Below are positions 468-53,020 of a stretch of 64,000 nt of DNA, piece after piece; the first letter of the stretch is position 1; the number at the start of each line of letters is the position of its first letter. A program made the translations under genes and the position numbers. The stretch is from IMG/VR virus record IMGVR_UViG_3300044680_000280, positions 248,001 through 312,000 of that record, one strand, 5' to 3'. The notes under the pieces were generated by a model. That model ran no database searches and was not told the DNA's origin. It saw only the letters and a list, made by a program, of their open reading frames with translations.

Positions 468-751
468 TTTCCGAACGCCCGTTACCTGAACCTTGGTGGG
501 TCTACATTATCCAGGGGTCAGGTAACGGGCGTCTCTATACCGGCATCGCGAAGAACGTTGACAAACGACTGAAAGCCCACAACACGGGACGTGGGGCTAA
601 GTTCACTCGAATCGGCGGCCCGTGGTTCTGTATCTACAGAAAGGAGTATCCCTCACACGGGGACGCCATCCGAGAAGAGATACGAATTAAAAAGCTGACC
701 CGGGCGCAGAAGTTTCAACTGGCTCAAAGACCTCAAAGTCCTCTTCGATAG
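464..751 (+). CDS. GIY-YIG nuclease family protein (YhbQ/UPF0213-like)
   Basis: WWVYII...LYTGIAKNVDKRLKAHNTGRGAKFTR...AIREEIRIKKL. Confidence 0.9.
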   Translation: MISERPLPEPWWVYIIQGSGNGRLYTGIAKNVDKRLKAHNTGRGAKFTRIGGPWFCIYRKEYPSHGDAIREEIRIKKLTRAQKFQLAQRPQSPLR

Positions 752-2315
752 TCATTGCCATGTTGCGTTTGATCTCCGCAATCTTGTGTTTGGCAAAAAC
801 TCTCTTCGTTGCCAACTTGTGAAATTTGGGGTCTCGCTCGATTCCGATGAACTGACGGTTCTCTTCTGTAGCCGCCAGGCACGTCGTACCCGACCCGCAG
901 TAAGGATCGAGAACGACTCCTCCGACCGGCGTGACCAACTTGACGAGGTATTTCATCAGAGAAATAGGTTTTACGGTTGGGTGAAAGTTGGCTTCCTTAG
1001 GCACGTAATCGAGGTGCTCCAAGTACTTCTCTGGGATGTACTGAACGACCCACTCTTCGACCGCGCGCCCTGACTCCAAGGAGAAAGACGTGTCGAGACT
1101 GTCGTCACCCGGATTGAGGGCCAACATATTTCCTAGGGTCGCCTCCTCGATCTCAAAAAGGAGCTCTTCCGAGACGTCTTCTTTGACAATGTGCTCCTTG
1201 AGCTTGCTCTTCGGGAGACCCTCATTGCGTTCCTCCCTTGACGCTTTCGCCGCATAGAAGAACGGGGCCGCCGGCATAAACTGAACGAAGAAGCGAGCCA
1301 TACCGCCCGCATCTTTCGCAGAAGCACTTTGGGCATTCATTGTGGCGACCGGGCAACCCTCGACACATGCATAAAGGGCGACTTCTTCCTTGCCCTCGGC
1401 ATCGCCTGTCTTCATGCTCGTGTACGCATGACCCGCCCCGTGACCGAAGGGCTTCATGCCGTCATCGAATCGATTGATGATCGGGGCATCCACCTTCGCC
1501 GTCCCCGTCTGAGTGCATCCCTCCGCATGGGTGAGAACCGCGTTTGCTGGCCAACGGCCGCCCTCCTTGACGTCGTTGGCGCCCGAAAGATCGCTACTGT
1601 TCTTCCAGGAGTTGCCGAGAGACCCACCCTTTGCCTTGAGGGCGGAGACCATAGCCCTGTGCTGCTCGAGGTCTTTGGCGTTCGCGTGCTTCACCCGCGT
1701 CCCGTCGATGTTGATTCCACCCGTTCCCGTCTGGACAATCTGATCAGCAAGGGTGCCGCTGAACGGCTTCCGCATGCAAAGGATGGGCTCCCAAGCCGGT
1801 TTCAGCGCCGTACCGTACCCCTCAAACTGGTCCGCCCTGGCGAGCAGTTTGGCCTTCAGCTCCGGGTCTTCCGCAACCGCGGCCCGCTTGCGTAACTCCT
1901 TGGAAATGTTCATGGACTTGGGAAAGCCTTGCGCTTGAATCCATTGTAGGCAAGGGGATCCAAAGTACGACGAAATGGTGTCTCGGTTGTCGAACCCTGC
2001 GGCTCGGAGTCCGATGCTCATGACGTCCCAGGTTCGAGTCGAAGCGAAGCTCAAAACGTAGCCCCCTGGCTTGAGCACGCGGAGGCACTCACGCCAAACG
2101 GGCACGGAGGGGATGTCCCACTTGTAAGACATGAAGTCCCCGCCCATGTCGAGCGTCGACCCGCGAAGGTACGCTTCAATGTCCTCCTTCGTTGGCTCCC
2201 TCGTGCCCATCCCGTAGGGGGGATCCGTCACAATACTGTCGACGGAGTTGTCAGGAAGGGTCTTCAGAACTTCGAGGCAGTCACCATTAAGTATGACATT
2301 GGTGGACTCGGACAT
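687..2315 (-). CDS. DNA N4/N6 methyltransferase (beta class)
   Basis: Motif IV DPPY near N-terminus; HPTVKP and motif I DPYCGSG near C-terminus. Confidence 0.92.
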   Translation of the reverse strand: MSESTNVILNGDCLEVLKTLPDNSVDSIVTDPPYGMGTREPTKEDIEAYLRGSTLDMGGDFMSYKWDIPSVPVWRECLRVLKPGGYVLSFASTRTWDVMSIGLRAAGFDNRDTISSYFGSPCLQWIQAQGFPKSMNISKELRKRAAVAEDPELKAKLLARADQFEGYGTALKPAWEPILCMRKPFSGTLADQIVQTGTGGINIDGTRVKHANAKDLEQHRAMVSALKAKGGSLGNSWKNSSDLSGANDVKEGGRWPANAVLTHAEGCTQTGTAKVDAPIINRFDDGMKPFGHGAGHAYTSMKTGDAEGKEEVALYACVEGCPVATMNAQSASAKDAGGMARFFVQFMPAAPFFYAAKASREERNEGLPKSKLKEHIVKEDVSEELLFEIEEATLGNMLALNPGDDSLDTSFSLESGRAVEEWVVQYIPEKYLEHLDYVPKEANFHPTVKPISLMKYLVKLVTPVGGVVLDPYCGSGTTCLAATEENRQFIGIERDPKFHKLATKRVFAKHKIAEIKRNMAMTIEEDFEVFEPVETSAPGSAF

Positions 2316-3194: not shown

Positions 3195-4322
3195 TCAGGC
3201 CATCGACGAGACGAAGATGTTTTCCTCTGCCAATTCCACATCTTCCTCAATGGTTACCGACTCTTCCATCAGGTCGTCGGTAATGACCTGATCCTCGGCA
3301 CCCGGAGTAGGACGCATTTGAATCTGTCGACGCTCGCGGGCGATGCGGACCCAAGGACGGAGCAGACGTTGAGTGAGGCGGAGGTCATCCGGAGATAGCT
3401 CGAGCTTGCGGACAGCTTCCTCGATGTCGTACCCTTCATTGATGAACTCGAAGATCTCTTCCGCACGGGCGGCGGCGGGACTCTTGGAGATCTCCCGGAG
3501 CAGAAGGCTGAGTTCGGCACGGGCTTCTTGATTGCAGGGGGTCTTATCCGGCAGTCGGCTTTCCCAGGAGAGGGAGTCCTCGACGAGCGGGCGGAGCTCC
3601 TGGAAGGTGTCCCAAACGCGCTCCTTGTTGTGTCGCTCCTCACCTCGGCAAAAGTTCTTGAAGCGATTGTGCACCGTCTTTGAAAGGTAGTTCTGAAAAT
3701 GCCGCCGGCTCTTGGGGACGATCGTGTTGTGGTCGAGCATGACCGCGTCCTCGAAGTACTCCATCTCACCGAGTCGAATGACCGCCGCGAGATTGTAGGT
3801 AGTGTGCTTGGAGTCCGCCTTGCCCTTCAAAGGAAGGACCATCCAAGGCTCCCGGGGAACCGTCGCAACGAACGTCTTGATCGCGTCACGAAACCGTTCC
3901 CACGTGATTCCAAGGGCCTTGTGGGCTTGTTCCCCGGTGATCGTCTCCGGAACGACGACGTTGCTCTGCTCGAGAAATCGTTCGATCGCGCGGGCTTGCT
4001 TCAGTTGGAGAAAGATCTCCTGAACGATGTCACGCGTTCGGCTGTTCGCCGTGACCTTGTTGTAACGACTGATCAGGTGAACGACGAGGGCGCCGTAGAG
4101 GCGAATGAACTGGTCGTACACTTCGCGCTTGTCGAGAGACCGTATGTCGAAAATGGCCTGAATGTAGTCAGCGTAAATCGGGTCGAACGTTTCGGATTCC
4201 ACCTCGGAGCTTCGATGTCGTCGAACCTTTCGAATTCCTGTGATCTCGTCTTGGAAATCCTCCGCATCAGGTGCGTCGGGGGTGAGATTGACGACGTTCG
4301 AGGCTTGGTTTCGAATTGACAT
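3195..4322 (-). CDS. ECF-like sigma factor with insertion in region 2
   Basis: DIVQEIFLQL (2.2-like), FQNYLSKTVHNRFKNFCR (2.3/2.4-like), FEFINEGYDIEEAVRKLELS (region 4-like). Confidence 0.65.
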   Translation of the reverse strand: MSIRNQASNVVNLTPDAPDAEDFQDEITGIRKVRRHRSSEVESETFDPIYADYIQAIFDIRSLDKREVYDQFIRLYGALVVHLISRYNKVTANSRTRDIVQEIFLQLKQARAIERFLEQSNVVVPETITGEQAHKALGITWERFRDAIKTFVATVPREPWMVLPLKGKADSKHTTYNLAAVIRLGEMEYFEDAVMLDHNTIVPKSRRHFQNYLSKTVHNRFKNFCRGEERHNKERVWDTFQELRPLVEDSLSWESRLPDKTPCNQEARAELSLLLREISKSPAAARAEEIFEFINEGYDIEEAVRKLELSPDDLRLTQRLLRPWVRIARERRQIQMRPTPGAEDQVITDDLMEESVTIEEDVELAEENIFVSSMA

Positions 4323-7770: not shown

Positions 7771-7965
7771 ATGGACCCGTTTACCATCATCGCAATCTTC
7801 GTGCTCATCGGGTACGCTCTTCGGCAACGGCAGAAGGCCAAGGCCGAACGCGAGGTTCGCCTCCGGGTCGAGCTCAAAAACGCGGCTCTCCTGGCCGAGA
7901 TTGAGCGCCAGGGATTCGAGTTCCGCAGCGCATTCAACAACGGACTGGATCTGCACGTCCACTAG
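7771..7965 (+). CDS. small membrane-anchored protein
   Basis: N-terminal hydrophobic helix followed by charged helix. Confidence 0.6.
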   Translation: MDPFTIIAIFVLIGYALRQRQKAKAEREVRLRVELKNAALLAEIERQGFEFRSAFNNGLDLHVH

Positions 7966-9782
7966 GACAGTAGGTTCAAGAACGTCAAGAAAAGGTCTTC
8001 CCTCTGGGTCGAGGACAAGACAGACTTGAAGCTATCGAGCTGATCCCGAGTCATGTCGTACTCGAGCACGTAGTGGGCAAAAACCTCGGCGAACGCCTCG
8101 TCGATGTTGCTCTTACCGTAGTCGGACACGGGGGTGACGGGACGCTCGTCCGTCTCATACTCCTCGTGGTAAGCTTTCCAGGCATCTCCGACGCGGGCCC
8201 CCTGCGCCTTGTTGAACTCGTCGACTGCGATGTCAATGTACTTGTCAGCTTTGGTCACAGCCTCGACGATCTTTTCCTCGTAGCCGTCGAGCCATTCGGA
8301 CAAGTGTTTCTGAAAAACCTCCATCCAGTAGGCGTCGAAACTCTTCGGCTTTTGACTGGGTTCGGGCTCTGAGTGAATCTTCTTTGAAATGTCCTCGTCA
8401 AAATCAAAGGCGTACCTCTGAACGGCGCTGCTAGCCGTGAGCATTTCATCAAAGGCATGCTTCGTTGTAGGATTCAATGTTGACGAGGCGCCAGCGGAGT
8501 GCACCGCGTCAAGCATGTCGTTGTAAAATGTCCAGCCCGCCTTGGAGACCCGTTCGAAATTCTCCTTGAGGATGTCTCGAAAAAAGCTCTTCTTGGGAAA
8601 AGGGGACGTCAACGGGTCCAGGGACGATCGAACGGCCTTGGCGGCGGCTTGAACCTTTTCTTTGGCTGCTCTCACCGCATCGTTCAAAATGAGAATCGCC
8701 TTACCTGTCGGTTTTGGTTTCTTGTGCACCCTCACCAAGGATTCGAACTTCCCTCTTTGAGACTGGCTCATGAACTTGAACCAGTAGCGGTGCCCGAGCT
8801 CATGAGCCATCAGCTCGACAATGAACCAACTCGGTCGGTTGAACACATTGACGACGTCGGGTCCAATAGGGTAGTTTCCACCCACGCCGCCACCCGTGTT
8901 GTAATTGACCCCTCCACAATCGTTGCAGGAGATGTACACGGTTCCGTACCAAACCTTGTCCAGACGTTTTGCCTTGAGTTTGTGGTACGCCTCCGTCAGG
9001 TACTTGACGTAGTCCTTCACATTTTCTGGCGTTACGGTCAGATCTCGTATAACGACTTTGATGCCATGCAGCTCAAACTGGGTGTGAGTGTCTAGTTTGT
9101 CCTCGGAGTATACGGTCTGAAGCACATCCTTCAGGTGATCGATCCAACTGATGGGATCCACCTTCAAAGCCTTCTTGTCGATGGTGATCAGTCTCTTGAT
9201 GGCTGCATCCAGGTTCAATCGTTTGAAGAGGCCGTACTTCTCATTGAGTCGACTGTAGTCATTGTTCCGACTCCGCTCCAAAGCATCGATCTCGACGGGG
9301 GTCGCCTTTTTGAGCACCTTCTTTGCCAGGGCCACAACAGCTTCCCTGTCGACTTTCCAAACGCCTTTGAGAGCGATTTGAAGACTCGGCACCTTCTCCT
9401 CAAACATCGTCTGTACTTTGGATGTGATTGAGTTGAAAATCTCGTCTTCAACCGTTTGGACTGGATACACGCTATCAATCGCCCGATCAAGCAGAGCGTA
9501 GGAAGCCGATATCTCTTTGAGAGGCTCCTCGATCATCGAGAACCTCATATCGATTGATTGCTCGGCAAACTGGTGGATTCCAAAATTGACTAAGTCCGTT
9601 TTGAATTTTTTGTAGAAGGCTAGGAGGTCGCCAATCTTCCACGACACCTCTCGATTGCTGTCTAGCTTATCCGTAAGGATCTTCTTTAGCTCAGCCTTCT
9701 TCTCCCGCCAGAACTTGTCGGGGATGAACCCACCCGTTCGCAGAAGGAATCGTCGAGCGACACGTTTTGCGAGCTGATCCAC
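7962..9782 (-). CDS. zincin-like metallopeptidase domain protein
   Basis: AHELGH zinc motif plus distal DYGKSNIDEAFAEVF; N-terminal AKRVARRFL. Confidence 0.65.
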   Translation of the reverse strand: MDQLAKRVARRFLLRTGGFIPDKFWREKKAELKKILTDKLDSNREVSWKIGDLLAFYKKFKTDLVNFGIHQFAEQSIDMRFSMIEEPLKEISASYALLDRAIDSVYPVQTVEDEIFNSITSKVQTMFEEKVPSLQIALKGVWKVDREAVVALAKKVLKKATPVEIDALERSRNNDYSRLNEKYGLFKRLNLDAAIKRLITIDKKALKVDPISWIDHLKDVLQTVYSEDKLDTHTQFELHGIKVVIRDLTVTPENVKDYVKYLTEAYHKLKAKRLDKVWYGTVYISCNDCGGVNYNTGGGVGGNYPIGPDVVNVFNRPSWFIVELMAHELGHRYWFKFMSQSQRGKFESLVRVHKKPKPTGKAILILNDAVRAAKEKVQAAAKAVRSSLDPLTSPFPKKSFFRDILKENFERVSKAGWTFYNDMLDAVHSAGASSTLNPTTKHAFDEMLTASSAVQRYAFDFDEDISKKIHSEPEPSQKPKSFDAYWMEVFQKHLSEWLDGYEEKIVEAVTKADKYIDIAVDEFNKAQGARVGDAWKAYHEEYETDERPVTPVSDYGKSNIDEAFAEVFAHYVLEYDMTRDQLDSFKSVLSSTQREDLFLTFLNLLS

Positions 9783-15980: not shown

Positions 15981-17777
15981 ATGGCTACTCGTGTCAAACC
16001 GCTCCCGAAGATTCTCCTGGCACTCGCCCTCTTCGGCGGCCTCTTCTTCGTCTTTCACACCCTCGTCGCCAACGGCATCATCTCTCTGCCGGGAACCGCC
16101 GCCGAGGTTCCCAAGGTCGCCGCCGTTCCTACGGCGATTCCGACCGCAACGTCCGCTCCTCTTGTTCCCGCCGTGCCGATGCCGTCGGGCTCCGCCATCT
16201 CGAGCGGGACGAACATTCGAGCCTCCATGTGGGCATGGAACGCTCAAATGGGATTCATGTTCGCCAACGGCGGCCCCGATACGACGTCGGGCTCTCTCAT
16301 GGCCCAACACGGACTGAACGTCCACGTCAAGCGCGAGGACGACACGTCCAAGATGCAAGGAATGCTCATGGCTCTTGCCAAAGGCCTCAAGACCGACCCG
16401 AACACGTCCGCGGGTGTGCACTTCATCACGCTGATGGGCGATGGTACCGCGGCCTTCTTCGCCGCCGCCAACCCCGAGCTCAAGAAGATCTGCAAGGACT
16501 GCGAAGCCGAAGTCGTCGGTGTTCTCGGCTACTCGCGCGGTGAGGACAAGCTCATGGGTCCCGCCGAATGGAAGTCCAACCCGAAAGCCGCTCGCGGTCA
16601 CCTCATCGCGGGCGTCATCCGTGACGGAGACTGGAACGTTGCCATGAAGTGGGCGGGGGACAACGGACTGCTCAACAATCCCGACGAGACTACGTATGAC
16701 CCAGACGCACTGAACTGGCTCAACGCCGACACCTACATCGAGGCTGGGAACAAGTACATCTTGAACGTCTGTGAGCCTCGTCCCGTCGTCCACGGGGGCA
16801 AACGAACGGGCGAGACCAAGAGTGTCTGCGTCGACGGCGTCGTGACCTGGACTCCCGGAGACGTGAACGTGGCCCAAAAGAAGGGCGGTCTCGTTTCGAT
16901 CATCTCGACCAAGGAGTACAGTGGTCAAATGCCTTGCGCCCTTATTGGCATCAAGAAGTGGGACGTAGCCCACAAGACCGAGATCGAAGGCTTCCTGAAA
17001 GCCTCGTTCGATGGTGCGGATCAAGTTCGCCAATACCCGAGCGCCCTGCACAAGGCCGCGGAAATCAGCGCAGCGGTCTACGCAGACCCGGAAGCCAACG
17101 CCGATTACTGGGAGAAGTACTACAAGGGCACGTTAGAGACCGACCGTCAGGGCGTGAAAGTCTCTCTCGGTGGATCGTCCGTCTCCAATCTCGCTGACAA
17201 CCTCCAGATCTTCGGGCTCGCCCCGGGTTCCGCCAACCTTTACGAAGCCACCTACGTGACGTTCGGGGACATCGTGGTGCAGCAGTACCCGAAGCTCGTG
17301 CCGAACTACCCCAAGGTGACCGACGTCGTAAACGTGTCGTTCGTTCAGGATCTCGCAAATTCCGCTCCCCCTTCCCCCGCCGCAACCGCCGAACACAACA
17401 CCTTCGTTGCCGGCGCCCCGGTCGAAACGGTCTCCAAGAAATCGTGGTCGATCAACTTCGAAACGGGTAAAGCAACATTCACGCCAGACGCGATGAAAAC
17501 CCTCACGCAACTCGAGCGCGAACTCGTCATCACTGACCTCGCCATCGAAGTCGACGGTCATACGGACAACACGGGTGACCCATCATTCAATCAGACCCTC
17601 TCGAAGCAGCGCGCGGCGGCTGTTCAGACCTGGCTCTCACAGCAGTCCAGCGCGAACTTCCCACCCGAGCGATTCACCGTTCAAGGCTACGGAGATTCCA
17701 AGCCTATCGCAACGAACTCGACGCCCGTTGGTCAAGCAAAGAACCGTCGAGTCGACGTCGTCCTCGGTCAGCAGTAA
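15981..17777 (+). CDS. ABC substrate-binding (NMT1/TauA-like) domain fused to OmpA-C domain
   Basis: N-terminal anchor; GYSRGEDK...VTWTPGD core; C-terminal VDGHTDN...LSKQRAAAV...GYGDSKP...NRRVDV. Confidence 0.85.
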
Positions 17778-23886: not shown

Positions 23887-23981
23887 GGGAACCGCCTCTC
23901 GTCCTTTAGTACGGCAAAATCGCCTCGAAGTTCAATCTCATCCTTCAATTCTATGAGCGCCGCACCTACACGAAAAATAGG

Positions 23982-47658: not shown

Positions 47659-48159
47659 TCATTCGTCCTCTTCGGGACAGGACGAATCCCCGATGGCCGC
47701 CGCCGTGATCTCCCTCACTCGTTTCTGCTCCCGTTTCAAAAACTCCTCAACCGTAATGCCCAGCTCCCCCGCCCGCTTCTCCGCCGTCTCCCGTACCGAT
47801 GGCCATTTCACACGGTCCCGAAGAGGACCCTCCTTTTCCTTGGGAACCACGACGATTCCCCGTCGGAGCGTCTCCTCCGCGGTCACCATCCATCGCAATT
47901 CGCGAACGATGGATCGCTGAACTCGCTCCGACGGTTCCACCTTCCCCTCTATCCACCGAGTAACCGCAAACGGAGCCACTTCCAAGAGCTCCGCCATTTG
48001 TTCCACGCTTACCCCGCTGAGCGATATCCCGTCCCGAACAAGGTCGGCAAAGCTCCCCTCGTCCTCGAATAGGAACAGCCTCGCCCTCGTCAGGTACGAA
48101 CCCAAATCGCCCAGTACGTCCATGATCCCGAAGATACGCGGAAACAATCTCCGGGTCAA
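47659..48159 (-). CDS. XRE-type HTH transcriptional regulator
   Basis: SGVSVEQMAELLEVAPFAVTRWIEGKVEP. Confidence 0.7.
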   Translation of the reverse strand: MTRRLFPRIFGIMDVLGDLGSYLTRARLFLFEDEGSFADLVRDGISLSGVSVEQMAELLEVAPFAVTRWIEGKVEPSERVQRSIVRELRWMVTAEETLRRGIVVVPKEKEGPLRDRVKWPSVRETAEKRAGELGITVEEFLKREQKRVREITAAAIGDSSCPEEDE

Positions 48160-48831: not shown

Positions 48832-49067
48832 CCCCTCTCCCACTTCCCCTCATCATTCCACCTTCCAGACCCAAGAAGGAACGACGGCGACCCAGGCTCC
48901 CCCTCAAATGGGGCCCTCGAGTTCCCCTCGGGTCGGGACAACCCGTGCTTTCTCAGCCGTCGACCCCGACGGGCATTCTCAATGTCCCACATCACAAGAG
49001 CCACAAAGACCGCCGCGCCCCACAGCACCATCGAAACCGCGCCCCGTACCCGTTTCCAAATGCCCAT
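48828..49067 (-). CDS. small membrane protein
   Basis: GGTGTA 9 nt before ATG 49067; TM segment. Confidence 0.55.
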   Translation of the reverse strand: MGIWKRVRGAVSMVLWGAAVFVALVMWDIENARRGRRLRKHGLSRPEGNSRAPFEGEPGSPSFLLGSGRWNDEGKWERG

Positions 49068-49113
49068 GGGAAAGGTTACACCGAAGACGAACAGCGGGCG
49101 GGGGCTCGATGAT

Positions 49114-49186
49114 GTCGACGAACATCGAACCCAGCTCGATGTTCGTCGACGCAGTTCGATGAGTGGCTCGACGAACATCGAACCCA
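49114..49186. repeat. 15-bp perfect inverted repeat plus 19-bp direct repeat
   Basis: GTCGACGAACATCGA-N7-TCGATGTTCGTCGAC; TCGACGAACATCGAACCCA again at 49168-49186. Confidence 0.9.
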
Positions 49187-49801
49187 TGCCCGCGAAGCAG
49201 GGCGGTGGGGGTTTCCCCTTTTGGTCAAAAAGTATACCGACCTAAAAAATTCTGTTATTTTTCAAGGGCTTACCCAAAAAGGAATGACGTATGGGGTTAT
49301 CCGTATTACCATCTAACCGACCCGGGACCATACGTATACTCAATATGCCCCTTTCCCGAGATCTGTGAGGGCGAGTAAGATAATGGAGCGGTTCTACGCT
49401 CACTGTAACTAGACCGCCTCGATCGGTATACCCGACCCCGCCCTGCTTCGCGGGCCCGGGTCGATGATCCCCACTGAACAGACTTACCATACAGCACTGA
49501 ACTACCTACATCGCGCCATCTGTTCAGCACTGGTCACGTCAAGGGCTGAACAGAAGCCCTCACTGAACGCTGAGCTCAATCAGGTGTGGGCGAAAATCAC
49601 ATGTACCCACCTCTGGGCGATTCGAAGAGCGAGCTCCAAGATGGGACCCAAAAGGGGCGGCGGGGGTCGCACTACGGTTCAGTTCGCTACACACGAACGA
49701 ACCTACACACCTACCTACGAACACGGGCGGGTCGTGTGTGTGGTGGGCGGCGCCCAGGTATATATACCAGTGTTCGTAGAGGGGGGAGCGGTGAAGGTAT
49801 A

Positions 49802-50111
49802 TGGGGAACAAACACAAGCCCGCGGAGCAGGGCCCGGTGTATGTGATTCTATGGGCAATAATTGAAGCTGGCCCTCTTGGGCTACCCCGCAAGTGGCGTA
49901 TGAGGTTGGGGTCGGACCACATCGTTCACCTCGAGTGGAGCCACGACCACATCACCTGGACGACCGTCCCTCGAGTGGCCCTCCCGACGACGTATGGAAC
50001 GGGCACCTACGTCACATGGGACCTCGTGGGGGACCTGATGCAAGAAGGGGTTCCCGGAGCGCCCGCTTCCATTGGGGAACAAGCACAAGCCCGCGAAGCT
50101 GGGCCCGGTGT
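49802..50111 (+). repeat. 39-bp direct repeat pair (3 mismatches)
   Basis: 49802-49840 and 50073-50111. Confidence 0.9.
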
Positions 50112-50268
50112 CTGAACTGTTAACCGAGCCTGGGGTCAGAACCCCTAACGCCGCGCCGAGGATGCCCTCAGAGGGGCTTTGGGAGGACGCCTAGGCTTGG
50201 AGCCGTCCATATCGGGCGATGGGCTGTTGAGCCGGCTGATGTCCATCTCGGCTCTCCTTGCAGAAACG

Positions 50269-50392
50269 GTCAGTGAGCCCCGATTTAGGGTTGCGAGCCC
50301 TAGACCCACCCGAGGATACCTCCTGCGCTTCCCACGCGTAGGCACTTCAATGGTACCGGCCCTACCTCGGAAGCCCATCGGGGCTCACTGAC
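50269..50392 (-). ncRNA. candidate structured RNA closed by a perfect 16-bp stem
   Basis: GTCAGTGAGCCCCGAT/ATCGGGGCTCACTGAC; TTGAAC-N16-TTTACT ends 6 nt before 50392. Confidence 0.55.
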
Positions 50393-50453
50393 ACAAGTAG
50401 TAAAGCGCCGGGAAGGCGGAGTTCAAGTGGATGAGCTCAAGGTTTCGCTCTTT

Positions 50454-50670: not shown

Positions 50671-50832
50671 TCAGCTCATCCACCACTGAAGCAGGCGAGT
50701 CCACCAGCTCGGGAGATGGGCTTGCACGTGACTGCGCCAGGCATACTCCGCCAACTCGCACCGTACGATGAACTGTTTGTCGCAAATGGGGCAGCGCACG
50801 GCACCTCTGGGGAGGTCTACATCGAGCCCCAT
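50671..50832 (-). CDS. C2H2-like zinc-finger protein
   Basis: CPICDKQF...WRSHVQAH; ATG overlaps upstream stop. Confidence 0.55.
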   Translation of the reverse strand: MGLDVDLPRGAVRCPICDKQFIVRCELAEYAWRSHVQAHLPSWWTRLLQWWMS

Positions 50833-51005
50833 CAGTGGCCACAGACCGTGCATTTGACGCGGTCGCTCGGGGAGCCGTTCCGATTGATCCGCTCCTCCGT
50901 GTGACCGCAGGCAAGGACGAACGTCCAATGGTTCGCGGGAACGGCACGACGGCTCCGACGACGAACGATCGTGGTCTCGACCTTGAAAGAGCTGATGACG
51001 TCCAT
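50832..51005 (-). CDS. small zinc-binding protein
   Basis: LACGH...CTVC. Confidence 0.5.
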   Translation of the reverse strand: MDVISSFKVETTIVRRRSRRAVPANHWTFVLACGHTEERINRNGSPSDRVKCTVCGH

Positions 51006-51365
51006 GGTGAAAGTACAGCTCGGAGCGGGGCGAAGTTCAAACTTTGGGCTCATTCACCTGAGCTCGCAAAGCGATCGCTTCTTTTCGTGCGGACCAAGCA
51101 TCGGCGAACAGGGCATTAGCCGACCATGCGTCATGGTTGTCAGCCGCGGCCTCTGCCCGCTCTTCCAAGGCCGCCGCCTCTCGGTCCAACTCGTCGGCTC
51201 TCAACTCGTTCATGGTCCGTCCCTCCTGAAGGTAGTAAAGCGCCCGGACGATGAAAGTTCAATCCCCCGCCCCTTGGGGGAGTCTAGACCGAGCCCATTT
51301 TCCTCGAGCTCCGGCCGCCGAAAACGTTTCATTGCGGGGAACCTCACTTTTACCTACATGCAACG

Positions 51366-51430: not shown

Positions 51431-51481
51431 GGTTCTCCATTTGGGCTTGCACAGCCGAAAAAATCCGGCAGATTGTGTCGG

Positions 51482-51592
51482 GTAAAGGTAACGTCACACC
51501 TTGAGATGACGAGACCTGATCAGTCGTATGGCGTAAAGGTAACGTCACACCTTGAGATGACGAGTCGTATGGCGTAAAGGTAACGTCACACC
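51482..51592 (+). repeat. GTAAAGGTAACGTCACACC x3 (two copies extend to 32 bp)
   Basis: Copies at 51482, 51533, 51574. Confidence 0.9.
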
Positions 51593-51714
51593 CCTCTCGG
51601 CAGCCGTCGAAAGCTTCAGCCGAGAGGTCTCGATATGGCAGCTCAGAGCCTTCGTATCTGAGACTTGTAACGACTGATCAGGTGGAGGTGGCCCGATGAG
51701 CCCCTCGAGCGGGT

Positions 51715-52500: not shown

Positions 52501-52590
52501 GGACTTGAACCCCGTTCGAGCACGATTCACGGTGGGTGTGAAAAGTTCGAAAAAACCTCAACCTCGAGCGGCAACCGCCGTTCTATCTAA

Positions 52591-52848
52591 GTGAAGGGAC
52601 AAACGACAATGTCAGCTCTCGAAACCATCAAGCAGAACGGCAGCATCCTCGAAGACCTCATCAAGCCCGTCAAGGTATTCAAGGGCCCGTGGACGAGCTC
52701 GGACGAGTCCATCACCACCCCGACCGAAGTTCACCTCTACGCGGACGGCTCCGCCATCGCGTGCCACCCCGACCAGGGTGACTTCCCCTACGAAACCCTC
52801 TTCTTGCTCCAGAGGGCCTACCTCATCACCATTCCCGAAGCGTTGTAA
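52591..52848 (+). CDS. hypothetical protein
   Basis: ORF followed by a GC hairpin. Confidence 0.6.
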   Translation: MKGQTTMSALETIKQNGSILEDLIKPVKVFKGPWTSSDESITTPTEVHLYADGSAIACHPDQGDFPYETLFLLQRAYLITIPEAL

Positions 52849-53020
52849 TCCCCCTTGCCCCCCTTCGGGGGCTCGGGTTACGCTCCCGATGCTCTCACCG
52901 GATGGTCCGTGAGAGTCGACCCCGTCGTAAGGACCCTGCGCAGGCCTCACGACGGGGTTTCCTAATTTGCACGATCCCCTAACGTGATACGCTGAGCTCC
53001 TCGTAGAGCCCCGCATTCGA

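What the first reader, a model, noticed from the sequence alone, without database searches (positions are those of the whole stretch)
50269..50426. Promoter-defined ~124-nt RNA closed by a perfect 16-bp terminal stem
GTCAGTGAGCCCCGAT (50269-50284) and ATCGGGGCTCACTGAC (50377-50392) are exact complements. Internal helices include CCGAGG/CCTCGG, GGTAC-CATTGAA-GTGCC and TAGGG/CCCTA. A minus-strand class-2 promoter (TTGAAC 50421-50426, TTTACT 50399-50404) places the start site at 50392, the same 6-nt offset as for leaderless ATGs and exactly the first base of the stem. No convincing ORF covers the region. Alternative: a MITE-like insertion.
Basis: partly seen in the sequence, partly recalled or inferred. 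Interest (0 to 1): 0.65.

Follow-up and report, generated by a model that had tools for sequence, protein, structure and literature searches.

The report
Promoter-coupled RNA clamp in a megaphage
In an uncultivated peat megaphage of over 400 kb, a genuine phage promoter is predicted to start transcription on the first base of a perfect 16-bp stem closing a 124-nt segment, most likely the structured 5' end of a short messenger; it is a neat orphan with no relatives and no transcript evidence.

Summary
The core observation holds. Arms 50269-50284 and 50377-50392 are exact complements, single-copy, and far beyond chance.

The minus-strand promoter (TTGAAC 50426-50421, TTTACT 50404-50399) is real by recurrence. 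It scores 27.3 bits in a family with 40 matches (about 36 distinct sites) at 18 bits or more, against 0 in shuffles. In 14 of these sites, the 7th base after the -10 hexamer is the first base of a leaderless start codon. Here that base is G50392, the first base of the stem.

Three parts of the reading are not supported:
- The 92-nt interior folds no better than shuffles (z = +0.08), so the listed internal helices are chance-level.
- There is no terminator after the stem, so a 124-nt species is not defined.
- Eight bases after the stem lie the phage's usual ribosome-binding site (CAAGGAGAG), an ATG (50246) and a 33-codon frame.

My best reading is a 5'-terminal clamp on a short leftward transcript. 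It would act as an RNA stability or processing determinant.

I found no Rfam match, no homologues and no sequence variants, so covariation is untestable. I also found no target-site duplication and no other copies. One metatranscriptome has contigs beside the element but not on it.

Rivals are a stand-alone small RNA and a DNA-level inverted-repeat element. Interest is modest.

The parts
50421..50426 (-). -35 hexamer TTGAAC of the phage promoter family
   Evidence: TTGAAC is near-invariant in the family: 34 of the 36 distinct sites at 18 bits or more have it.
50399..50408 (-). Extended -10 element GCGC-TTTACT. The family consensus is GCGC/T-TGTACT, and the TTTACT variant is shared with the promoters at 51262-51234(-) and genome 352131(+).
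   Evidence: The whole promoter scores 27.3 bits. No shuffle reaches 18 bits.
50392..50392 (-). Predicted transcription start (G), the 7th base after the -10 hexamer and the first base of the stem
   Evidence: In 14 promoters of the family the 7th base after the hexamer is the first base of a leaderless start codon (13 ATG, 1 GTG) opening an ORF of 57-277 aa. This is inferred, not mapped.
50377..50392 (-). 5' arm of the clamp (RNA nt 1-16, GUCAGUGAGCCCCGAU)
   Evidence: Mean pairing probability is 0.98.
50285..50376 (-). 92-nt interior, with no fold beyond chance. It holds an SD-like AGGAGG (50324-50319).
   Evidence: z = +0.08 on the minus strand and -1.2 on the plus strand. Codon scores of the overlapping frames are negative.
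50269..50284 (-). 3' arm of the clamp (RNA nt 109-124)
50253..50259 (-). Shine-Dalgarno AAGGAGA, 9 nt after the stem (CGUUUCUG-C-AAGGAGA). The same CAAGGAGA(G/C) follows the promoters at genome 347807, 352166 and 381208.
   Evidence: It stays largely unpaired in the 323-nt fold.
50145..50246 (-). 33-codon frame MDISRLNSPSPDMDGSKPRRPPKAPLRASSARR; uncertain as a gene
   Evidence: Of 16 AAGGAGA+ATG sites in the genome, 15 open ORFs of 48 aa or more and this is the only short one. Its codon score is -2.3. One gene caller extends it to 54 aa from GTG 50309.
50076..50107 (-). Terminator-like hairpin with tail (CGGGCCCAGCUUCGCGGGCUUG UGCUUGUUCC). It is a possible 3' end for a transcript of about 315 nt. 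A 90%-identical copy lies at 49805-49836.
   Evidence: It overlaps the 3' end of the plus-strand ORF 49801-50115. Its function is not shown.

Best explanation
The element is the 5'-terminal module of a short leftward phage transcript, not a gene with its own defined 3' end.

Proposed sequence of events:
- RNA polymerase starts at G50392 from a promoter of the phage's TTGAAC-N16/17-(GC)TGTACT family.
- After 124 nt, the last 16 bases pair perfectly with the first 16. The transcript's 5' end is then buried in a blunt duplex with no unpaired 5' nucleotide.
- The transcript runs on through CAAGGAGAG and AUG 50246 into a 33-codon frame, perhaps as far as a hairpin near 50107-50076.

The clamp most likely acts at the RNA level as a stability or processing determinant. 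It would deny 5'-end-dependent decay enzymes (RppH, RNase E/G, RNase J) the single-stranded 5' end they need. It may also offer host RNase III an uninterrupted duplex, and cleavage there would release an RNA of about 124 nt.

Shown: the repeat, membership of the promoter family, the offset, the ribosome-binding site and AUG, and the autonomy of the fold.

Inferred: transcription itself, the exact +1, the 3' end, and the effect on decay or processing.
For: - Promoter family: 40 matches (about 36 distinct sites) at 18 bits or more against 0 in shuffles, and this site scores 27.3 bits.
- Of 34 sites at 20 bits or more, 18 are leaderless (14 with the start codon exactly at the predicted +1) and 11 have a ribosome-binding site and a start codon at +12 to +17. 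This is the only site followed by more than 100 nt of untranslated sequence, and the only one that starts on the first base of a perfect long repeat.
- I estimate that one end of a given repeat would coincide exactly with one of 34 start sites about 8 times in 100,000.
- The fold stays an independent 5' domain in the 323-nt transcript, with the ribosome-binding site largely unpaired.
- The CAAGGAGAG-N6-ATG after the stem matches the leaders of other promoters of the family.
- RppH needs at least two unpaired 5' nucleotides, and RNase III cleaves uninterrupted duplexes, including those in the rnc and pnp leaders (PMC3997798).
- A mobile DNA element is not supported: no other copies, no target-site duplication, and none of the three transposase families searched.
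Against: - There is no transcript evidence. The RNA run X9 has no contig on the element.
- No homologue or variant exists, so there is no covariation.
- A 16/16 Watson-Crick stem with sharp borders and no G-U pair is what a DNA-level event would also leave.
- The genome holds four other long-range perfect repeats of 14-16 bp that are not coupled to promoters. This suggests a DNA process makes such repeats.
- A simple hairpin would be enough to stabilise a messenger, so the 92-nt interior is unexplained.
- The 33-codon frame has no coding signal.
- The record encodes no RNase III, and the host is unknown.
Confidence: 0.45

Rival explanations
1. This is the first reader's view: a stand-alone, trans-acting small RNA of about 124 nt. 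The transcript would end or be trimmed right after the stem, giving a stable RNA whose two ends are paired, as in 6S, Y or 5S-type stable RNAs.
For: The promoter and +1 are as above. Paired 5' and 3' ends are typical of stable RNAs. The frames over and after the element score poorly as coding.
Against: - No U-tract or other terminator follows the stem.
- A ribosome-binding site and AUG follow within 9-22 nt.
- The interior has no fold beyond chance.
- There is no Rfam match even at E = 10.
- No target complementarity beyond chance exists in the genome.
- No Ro/TROVE or reverse transcriptase partner is encoded in the record.
Confidence: 0.17
2. This is a DNA-level inverted-repeat element with no selected RNA function. 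It could be a MITE-like insertion between a promoter and its ribosome-binding site, or a perfect repeat made by template switching during replication. It would be transcribed only because of where it sits.
For: - The 16/16 arms are perfect, with sharp borders and no G-U pairs.
- The interior is chance-level.
- Removing the element would leave a 15-nt distance from the -10 hexamer to the ribosome-binding site, close to the family norm of 7-8 nt.
- Four other perfect repeats of 14-16 bp with 131-142-nt loops exist in the record, against about 0.1 expected.
- Relatives of the neighbouring 62-aa gene lack the element.
- The size class matches ERIC and Correia elements (PMC2649163).
Against: - It is single-copy in the record and absent from the viral, metagenome and genome collections by stem pattern.
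- There is no target-site duplication.
- No rve, DDE_Tnp_1 or TnpB transposase is in the record.
- The arms of the five repeats share no sequence.
- The exact coincidence of the outer border with the predicted +1 is left unexplained.
Confidence: 0.25
3. This is an invertible DNA segment (inverton) flanked by 16-bp inverted repeats and flipped by a site-specific recombinase, which would change the leader sequence.
For: The geometry fits known invertons, with short perfect repeats around about 100 bp next to a promoter. One tyrosine recombinase is encoded at genome 390433-390900.
Against: - No strand-switch joints appear in any laid contig, and the X3 contig spans the element in the reference orientation.
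- The promoter lies outside the segment, and flipping yields no obvious new signal.
- The recombinase lies 92 kb away.
- No serine invertase is encoded.
- The five repeats share no consensus.
Confidence: 0.03
4. This is an origin-activating or primer transcript. The promoter fires toward an origin-like region at 49100-49600 (hairpins, iteron-like repeats, an AT-rich stretch), and the structured RNA takes part in starting replication, as at the T7 primary origin or with ColE1 RNA II.
For: The direction of transcription fits. The region has origin-like features and sits at a local minimum of cumulative GC skew.
Against: The AT-rich stretch lies about 1 kb downstream, beyond a possible terminator. 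No replication-initiator gene was identified nearby. The origin itself is only a guess.
Confidence: 0.05
5. This is protein-coding: a 54-aa frame (GTG 50309) or a 77-aa frame (ATG 50378) on the minus strand that runs through the element in frame with the 33-codon ORF.
For: One automatic gene caller calls the 54-aa frame. AGGAGG lies 10 nt before GTG 50309. The three starts are in frame.
Against: Codon scores are -5.7 and -8.3. The products are Arg/Gly/Pro-rich and low in complexity. The JGI caller leaves the region empty. A perfect 16-bp repeat is not explained by coding.
Confidence: 0.03

Closest known systems
5'-terminal stem-loop mRNA stabilisers (E. coli ompA leader type; B. subtilis 5' stabilisers such as ermC or the cryIIIA STAB-SD)
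   Same: The structure begins at or within a nucleotide or two of +1, so no single-stranded 5' end is available to RppH, RNase E or RNase J (PMC3997798). It sits upstream of a ribosome-binding site. An internal SD-like AGGAGG is present.
   Different: The known examples are short local hairpins. Here a long-range 16-bp clamp encloses 92 nt. No half-life data exist, and the start site is predicted rather than mapped.
RNase III processing sites in leaders and phage early transcripts (T7 R sites, lambda N leader, E. coli rnc and pnp leaders)
   Same: An uninterrupted duplex lies in a promoter-proximal untranslated region of a phage transcript. Cleavage would separate a structured 5' piece from the downstream messenger.
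   Different: The duplex is 16 bp, shorter than the roughly two helical turns of classical sites (my recollection). Its arms are 92 nt apart. The record encodes no RNase III and the host is unknown. Cleavage is untested.
Correia/CREE (NEMIS) and ERIC-type small palindromic elements
   Same: These are units of about 100-155 bp bounded by terminal inverted repeats. They are co-transcribed with neighbouring genes, fold as hairpin RNAs, are bound or cleaved by RNase III, and sit next to promoters (PMC2649163).
   Different: Those elements are multi-copy families with conserved repeats, and their insertions duplicate the target site (a TA for Correia elements, from my recollection). This element is single-copy, has no duplication and has no relatives in any collection searched.
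Leader-derived phage immunity RNAs (P1/P7 c4, P4 CI)
   Same: Each is a small structured RNA made from the 5' leader of a phage operon under its own promoter.
   Different: Those RNAs have defined complementary targets downstream and known processing by RNase P. Here only a 9-nt match (nt 13-21 with 50225-50217) exists, and it is partly buried in the clamp.

Membership tests
Phage TTGAAC-N16/17-(GC)TGTACT promoter family of this genome | Both hexamers and the GC-rich extended -10 at 16-17 nt spacing, scoring above the shuffle range | tested here: met
   The site scores 27.3 bits. The genome has 40 matches (about 36 distinct sites) at 18 bits or more, against 0 in three shuffles.
Phage TTGAAC-N16/17-(GC)TGTACT promoter family of this genome | Directly followed by a start codon, either leaderless or led by a ribosome-binding site within about 35 nt | tested here: not met
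   This is the only one of 34 strong sites with more than 100 nt before a ribosome-binding site and AUG.
Any Rfam family (riboswitches, 6S, Y/YrlA, tmRNA, ribozymes, known phage RNAs) | A covariance-model match at the gathering score | tested here: not met
   There are no matches in the window at gathering score. At E up to 10, the one match inside the element is a 12-nt XIST-repeat noise hit, and the other two lie beside it. ARAGORN finds no tRNA or tmRNA.
Intrinsic terminator | A GC-rich hairpin with a 3-8 nt loop, followed by a U-tract | tested here: not met
   The loop is 92 nt and the tail is CGUUUCUGC. The scan does not list it.
MITE / Correia-like element | Terminal inverted repeats | tested here: met
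   The arms are 16/16 perfect.
MITE / Correia-like element | Target-site duplication flanking the repeats | tested here: not met
   The plus-strand flanks are ...GAAACG and ACAAGT..., with no direct repeat.
MITE / Correia-like element | Multiple dispersed copies in the same or a host genome | tested here: not met
   There is one copy in the 406,734-bp record. The stem pattern finds none in viral contigs, metagenome contigs or genome contigs. Those scans find exact matches only, and the host genome is unknown.
MITE / Correia-like element | A parent transposase with matching repeats | tested here: inconclusive
   No rve, DDE_Tnp_1 or TnpB is in the record. The host could supply one.
Retron ncRNA (msr-msd) | Terminal a1/a2 inverted repeats together with an adjacent reverse transcriptase gene | tested here: not met
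   The repeats are present, but there is no RVT_1 match anywhere in the record.
Bacterial or phage Y RNA | An end-paired stem with a Ro-binding site and a Ro (TROVE) gene in the genome | tested here: not met
   There is no TROVE match and no Rfam match.
Inverton | Both orientations present in a population, with a nearby invertase | tested here: inconclusive
   No strand-switch joints appear, but only contigs could be laid. No serine recombinase is encoded. The single tyrosine recombinase lies 92 kb away.
5'-terminal stem-loop stabiliser | The stem begins within a nucleotide or two of the transcript's 5' end | tested here: met
   The predicted +1 is the first paired base. The start site is inferred from 14 leaderless genes, not mapped.
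5'-terminal stem-loop stabiliser | It lengthens the half-life of the downstream RNA | not testable with these tools
   This needs rifampicin-chase or reporter assays.
RNase III processing site | Cleavage of the duplex by RNase III | not testable with these tools
   A 16-bp uninterrupted duplex is present. No RNase III is encoded in the record, and the host enzyme is unknown.

The most novel reading that the evidence does not exclude
The clamp is one example of a new design in giant phages. In this design, a promoter-coupled RNA has its 5' and 3' arms forming a perfect duplex from +1, and the phage makes it as a free RNA of about 124 nt. That RNA might serve as a double-stranded decoy or sponge for a host nuclease or an RNA-sensing defence, or as a primer or activator for the origin-like region 1 kb downstream. 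The other long-range perfect repeats in the genome (E3-E5) would then be further members.
Probability: 0.07. Interest if true: 0.7.

Novelty: new member of a known kind. Interest (0 to 1): 0.35.

Why it matters
If transcribed as predicted, this is a clean natural case in which a phage places its transcription start exactly on the first base of a long-range duplex. The phage's many leaderless genes fix the start site to the nucleotide. That would make it a convenient test object for how 5'-end pairing controls RNA decay and processing in hosts that use leaderless messengers.

The by-products may be more useful than the element itself. They are a promoter family of about 36 sites with 18 leaderless genes, and a candidate replication origin, both in an otherwise unannotatable peat megaphage.

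As it stands, the element is a single-copy orphan without conservation or expression data, so its wider significance is limited.

Tried and rejected
- Rfam at gathering score and at E up to 10 gave nothing. ARAGORN gave nothing.
- blastn against phage GenBank records found no match.
- Stem-pattern scans of viral contigs, metagenome contigs and genome contigs found 0 matches.
- Protein-anchored searches for syntenic relatives:
  - The 62-aa and 104-aa neighbours have no relatives in viral contigs.
  - The 62-aa protein has two homologues (82% and 71% identity) on short contigs L002-L004, but their downstream DNA carries other genes and nothing like the element.
  - The 104-aa protein has no homologue other than itself.
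  - The alignment-based metagenome scan found nothing.
- The sequencing runs that hold this stretch show it as 100% identical wherever the four laid runs cover it, so there are no variants to test covariation. L005 and L006 are identical to the window.
- The promoter-pattern scan of viral contigs gave only scattered single hits and no related phage.
- Searches of the record for partner genes found no RNase III, reverse transcriptase, Ro/TROVE, serine recombinase, TnpB, rve or DDE_Tnp_1.
- A search of the genome for complementary targets found nothing beyond chance.
- Treating the five long-range perfect repeats as one family was rejected. Their arms share no sequence, E1 lies inside a coding HTH gene, E3 lies in a divergent promoter region with operator-like repeats, and only the finding is promoter-coupled.

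Full report
**Source**

The window is bases 248001-312000 of a 406,734-bp IMG/VR virus record. The record is labelled provirus, is estimated 85% complete and has 55% G+C. The same sequence lies on a 463,523-bp JGI contig. It also occurs, 100% identical wherever covered, in peat and lake-water metagenomes. Most genes are orphans. I take it for an uncultivated megaphage.

**The observation**

- The two arms, 50269-50284 and 50377-50392, are exact complements with 92 nt between them.
- Both borders are sharp: the next pair outward and the next inward mismatch.
- In the whole record there are 14 perfect inverted repeats of 14 bp or more with loops of 200 or less. Mononucleotide shuffles give 0-1, and none reaches 15 bp.
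- The 124-mer folds at -65.7 kcal/mol on the minus strand (z -4.8) and -60.6 on the plus strand (z -5.55).
- When the arms are removed, the 92-nt interior folds no better than dinucleotide shuffles. The minus strand gives -34.2 against a mean of -34.5 (z +0.08), and the plus strand gives z -1.2.
The only non-random structural feature is the terminal repeat.

**The promoter**

This is the strongest part of the finding.

- TTGAAC-N15-18-T.TA.T occurs 29 times in the record, against about 3 expected.
- The aligned sites show extra conservation: pyrimidines after the -35 hexamer and GCGC/T before a TGTACT -10 hexamer.
- A two-block weight matrix finds 40 matches (about 36 distinct sites) at 18 bits or more, against 0 in three shuffles. 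Of the distinct sites, 34 lie between genome positions 261.9k and 406k; the two outliers, at 29.5k and 62.8k, score 19.1 and 19.6 bits.
- The finding's site (50426-50399, minus strand) scores 27.3 bits.
- Of the 34 sites at 20 bits or more, 18 are followed by a leaderless start codon with an ORF of 57-277 aa. In 14 of these the start codon begins exactly at the 7th base after the hexamer.
- Another 11 sites have a ribosome-binding site and a start at +12 to +17. Four more have short leaders of up to about 35 nt.
- The leaderless genes thus calibrate +1 to the nucleotide. Here the 7th base is G50392, the first base of the stem.
- This is also the only strong promoter of the family followed by more than 100 nt of untranslated sequence. 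It is the only one that starts on the first base of a perfect long repeat.
- By my estimate, one end of a given repeat would coincide exactly with one of 34 start sites about 8 times in 100,000. The coupling is therefore unlikely to be accidental.

**What follows the stem on the minus strand**

- The sequence after the stem is CGUUUCUG-CAAGGAGAG-CCGAG-AUG (ATG at 50246). It opens a 33-codon frame that ends at 50145.
- CAAGGAGA(G/C) followed by 6-7 nt and ATG is also the leader found after three other promoters of the family.
- Of 16 AAGGAGA+ATG sites in the genome, 15 open ORFs of 48 aa or more. This is the one short case.
- Its codon score is -2.3, so the frame may or may not be translated.
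- There is no U-tract after the stem, and the terminator scan does not list it.
- A terminator-like hairpin with a U-rich tail lies at 50107-50076 on the minus strand, with a 90% copy at 49836-49805.
- In a fold of 50392-50070, the clamp stays an autonomous 5' domain and the ribosome-binding site is largely unpaired.
- The '124-nt RNA' is therefore not defined at its 3' end. The data fit a structured 5' end on a transcript of about 150-315 nt at least as well.

**Coding**

The frames that cross the element score -8.3 (77 aa, minus strand) and -6.1 (70 aa, plus strand). JGI's caller leaves 50116-50453 empty. Another caller calls a 54-aa frame from GTG 50309, which scores -5.7.

**Conservation and expression**

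- There is no Rfam match and no tRNA or tmRNA.
- There is no similar DNA in phage records, viral contigs, metagenome contigs or genome contigs.
- The upstream 62-aa gene has two homologues at 82% and 71% identity. Similarity on their contigs stops at that gene.
- Every run laid that covers the element shows it as identical sequence, so covariation cannot be tested.
- One peat metatranscriptome (X9) has contigs at 50684-50918 and 52575-52853 but none on the element. It is shallow, not a small-RNA library, and held only as contigs. It shows nothing either way about the element.

**RNA or DNA element?**

Against a mobile DNA element:
- It is a single copy.
- There is no target-site duplication.
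- None of the three transposase families searched (rve, DDE_Tnp_1, TnpB) is in the record.
- There is an exact fit of its border to +1.

For a DNA-level origin:
- The arms are perfect, with no G-U pairs and with sharp borders.
- The interior is chance-level.
- Four further perfect repeats of 14-16 bp with 131-142-nt loops exist, where I expect about 0.1 by chance. None of them is promoter-coupled, and one lies inside a coding gene.
- A process such as template switching may therefore create perfect long-range repeats in this genome. That would not exclude later use at the RNA level.

Partner genes were not found:
- No reverse transcriptase, which a retron reading would need.
- No Ro/TROVE, which a Y RNA reading would need.
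- No phage RNase III.
- No serine invertase.
- The only tyrosine recombinase is 92 kb away.

**Mechanism I commit to (confidence 0.45)**

The element is a 5'-terminal clamp of a short leftward transcript.

- Once nt 109-124 are made, they pair with nt 1-16 and leave a blunt, fully paired 5' end.
- RppH needs at least two unpaired 5' nucleotides. Decay that depends on the 5' end starts from a single-stranded end.
- RNase III cleaves uninterrupted duplexes and acts in the rnc and pnp leaders (PMC3997798).
- The clamp would therefore stabilise the transcript, or be a processing site that frees a piece of about 124 nt.

The repeat, the promoter membership, the offset and the ribosome-binding site are shown. 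Transcription, the 3' end and the effect on decay are inferred.

**Closest known kinds**

- 5'-terminal stem-loop stabilisers.
- RNase III sites in phage leaders.
- At the DNA level, Correia/ERIC-type elements of 100-155 bp, which are co-transcribed and bound or cleaved by RNase III (PMC2649163).

Membership in the Correia/ERIC kind fails on copy number and target duplication.

**Verdict**

The repeat and the promoter coupling are real and non-random. The reading as a free 124-nt RNA with internal helices is only partly supported. The element is an orphan with no conservation or expression data. I score interest at 0.35, as a new member of a known kind (a structured phage leader or small RNA).

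Noticed in passing
whole record; in the window, start sites at 23901(-), 24017(+), 24468(+), 25638(+), 36104(-), 38821(-), 50392(-), 51005(-), 51227(-), 51750(+), 52212(+), 57642(+): A phage promoter family, TTGAAC-N16/17-(GCGC/T)TGTACT, has about 36 distinct sites at 18 bits or more, 34 of them between genome 261.9k and 406k. Of the 34 sites at 20 bits or more, 18 drive leaderless genes whose start codon begins 7-9 nt after the -10 hexamer, and the rest have leaders of 12-35 nt with AAGGAG-type ribosome-binding sites. This suggests one temporal class of genes and a host that translates leaderless messengers.
   Followed up: yes
window 48832-49800: This stretch of about 1 kb has no convincing gene and looks like an origin or regulatory hub. 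It has a perfect 15-bp hairpin (49114-49150), two copies of TCGACGAACATCGAACCCA, and 24-nt inverted repeats (49182-49205 and 49438-49461) around an AT-rich 232-nt stretch that is among the 10 lowest-GC 200-nt windows of the genome. It also has CACTGAAC x3 and CTGAACAG x3 iteron-like repeats at 49470-49570. A local minimum of cumulative GC skew lies nearby.
   Followed up: partly
window 49185-49203, 49440-49455 (inverted), 49815-49836, 50086-50107: Four copies of a small hairpin motif, GCCCGCGRAGCWGGGC, lie within 1 kb. The two longer copies (42 nt, 90% identical) keep the stem and differ in the loop, and on the minus strand they look like terminators with U-rich tails. They also coincide with the start and the end of the plus-strand ORF 49801-50115.
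   Followed up: partly
window 47665-47828 (E1), 51514-51683 (E3); genome 377342-377504 (E4), 387205-387363 (E5): Four more perfect long-range inverted repeats have 14-16-bp arms and loops of 131-142 nt, where I expect about 0.1 by chance. Their arms are unrelated in sequence. E1 lies inside an HTH repressor-like gene, and none is coupled to a promoter of the family. What generates them is unexplained.
   Followed up: partly
window 51480-51600: Three direct copies of GTAAAGGTAACGTCACACC, about 50 nt apart, lie in the divergent region between the promoters that start at 51227(-) and 51750(+). They partly overlap E3 and look like operator sites.
   Followed up: no
window 50684-50918 and 52575-52853: Contigs from a peat metatranscriptome (run X9) are identical to the phage here. 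They lie over the small minus-strand genes upstream of the element and over the 85-aa ORF 52591-52848, which has the best codon score in the area. This hints at expression in situ, although DNA carry-over is not excluded.
   Followed up: partly
whole record: A JGI contig of 463,523 bp carries the same sequence and extends beyond the end of the 406,734-bp record. The true genome is therefore larger, and the 'provirus' label may be an artefact. Identical 151-nt pieces also occur in a lake-water metagenome.
   Followed up: partly
genome 390106-390900 (outside the window): The only tyrosine recombinase of the record is a leaderless gene under a 29.4-bit promoter of the same family, about 3 kb from repeat E5.
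   Followed up: no
window 3195-4322(-), 687-2315(-), 15981-17777(+), 7962-9782(-): The Pfam scan gave a weak sigma-70 region 2 match (a possible phage sigma factor), an N6/N4 DNA methylase, an OmpA-domain protein (which suggests a diderm host), and a sub-threshold match (E 0.009, 16 bits) to the ATLF metalloprotease domain. That last match is probably only a zinc-protease motif.
   Followed up: no
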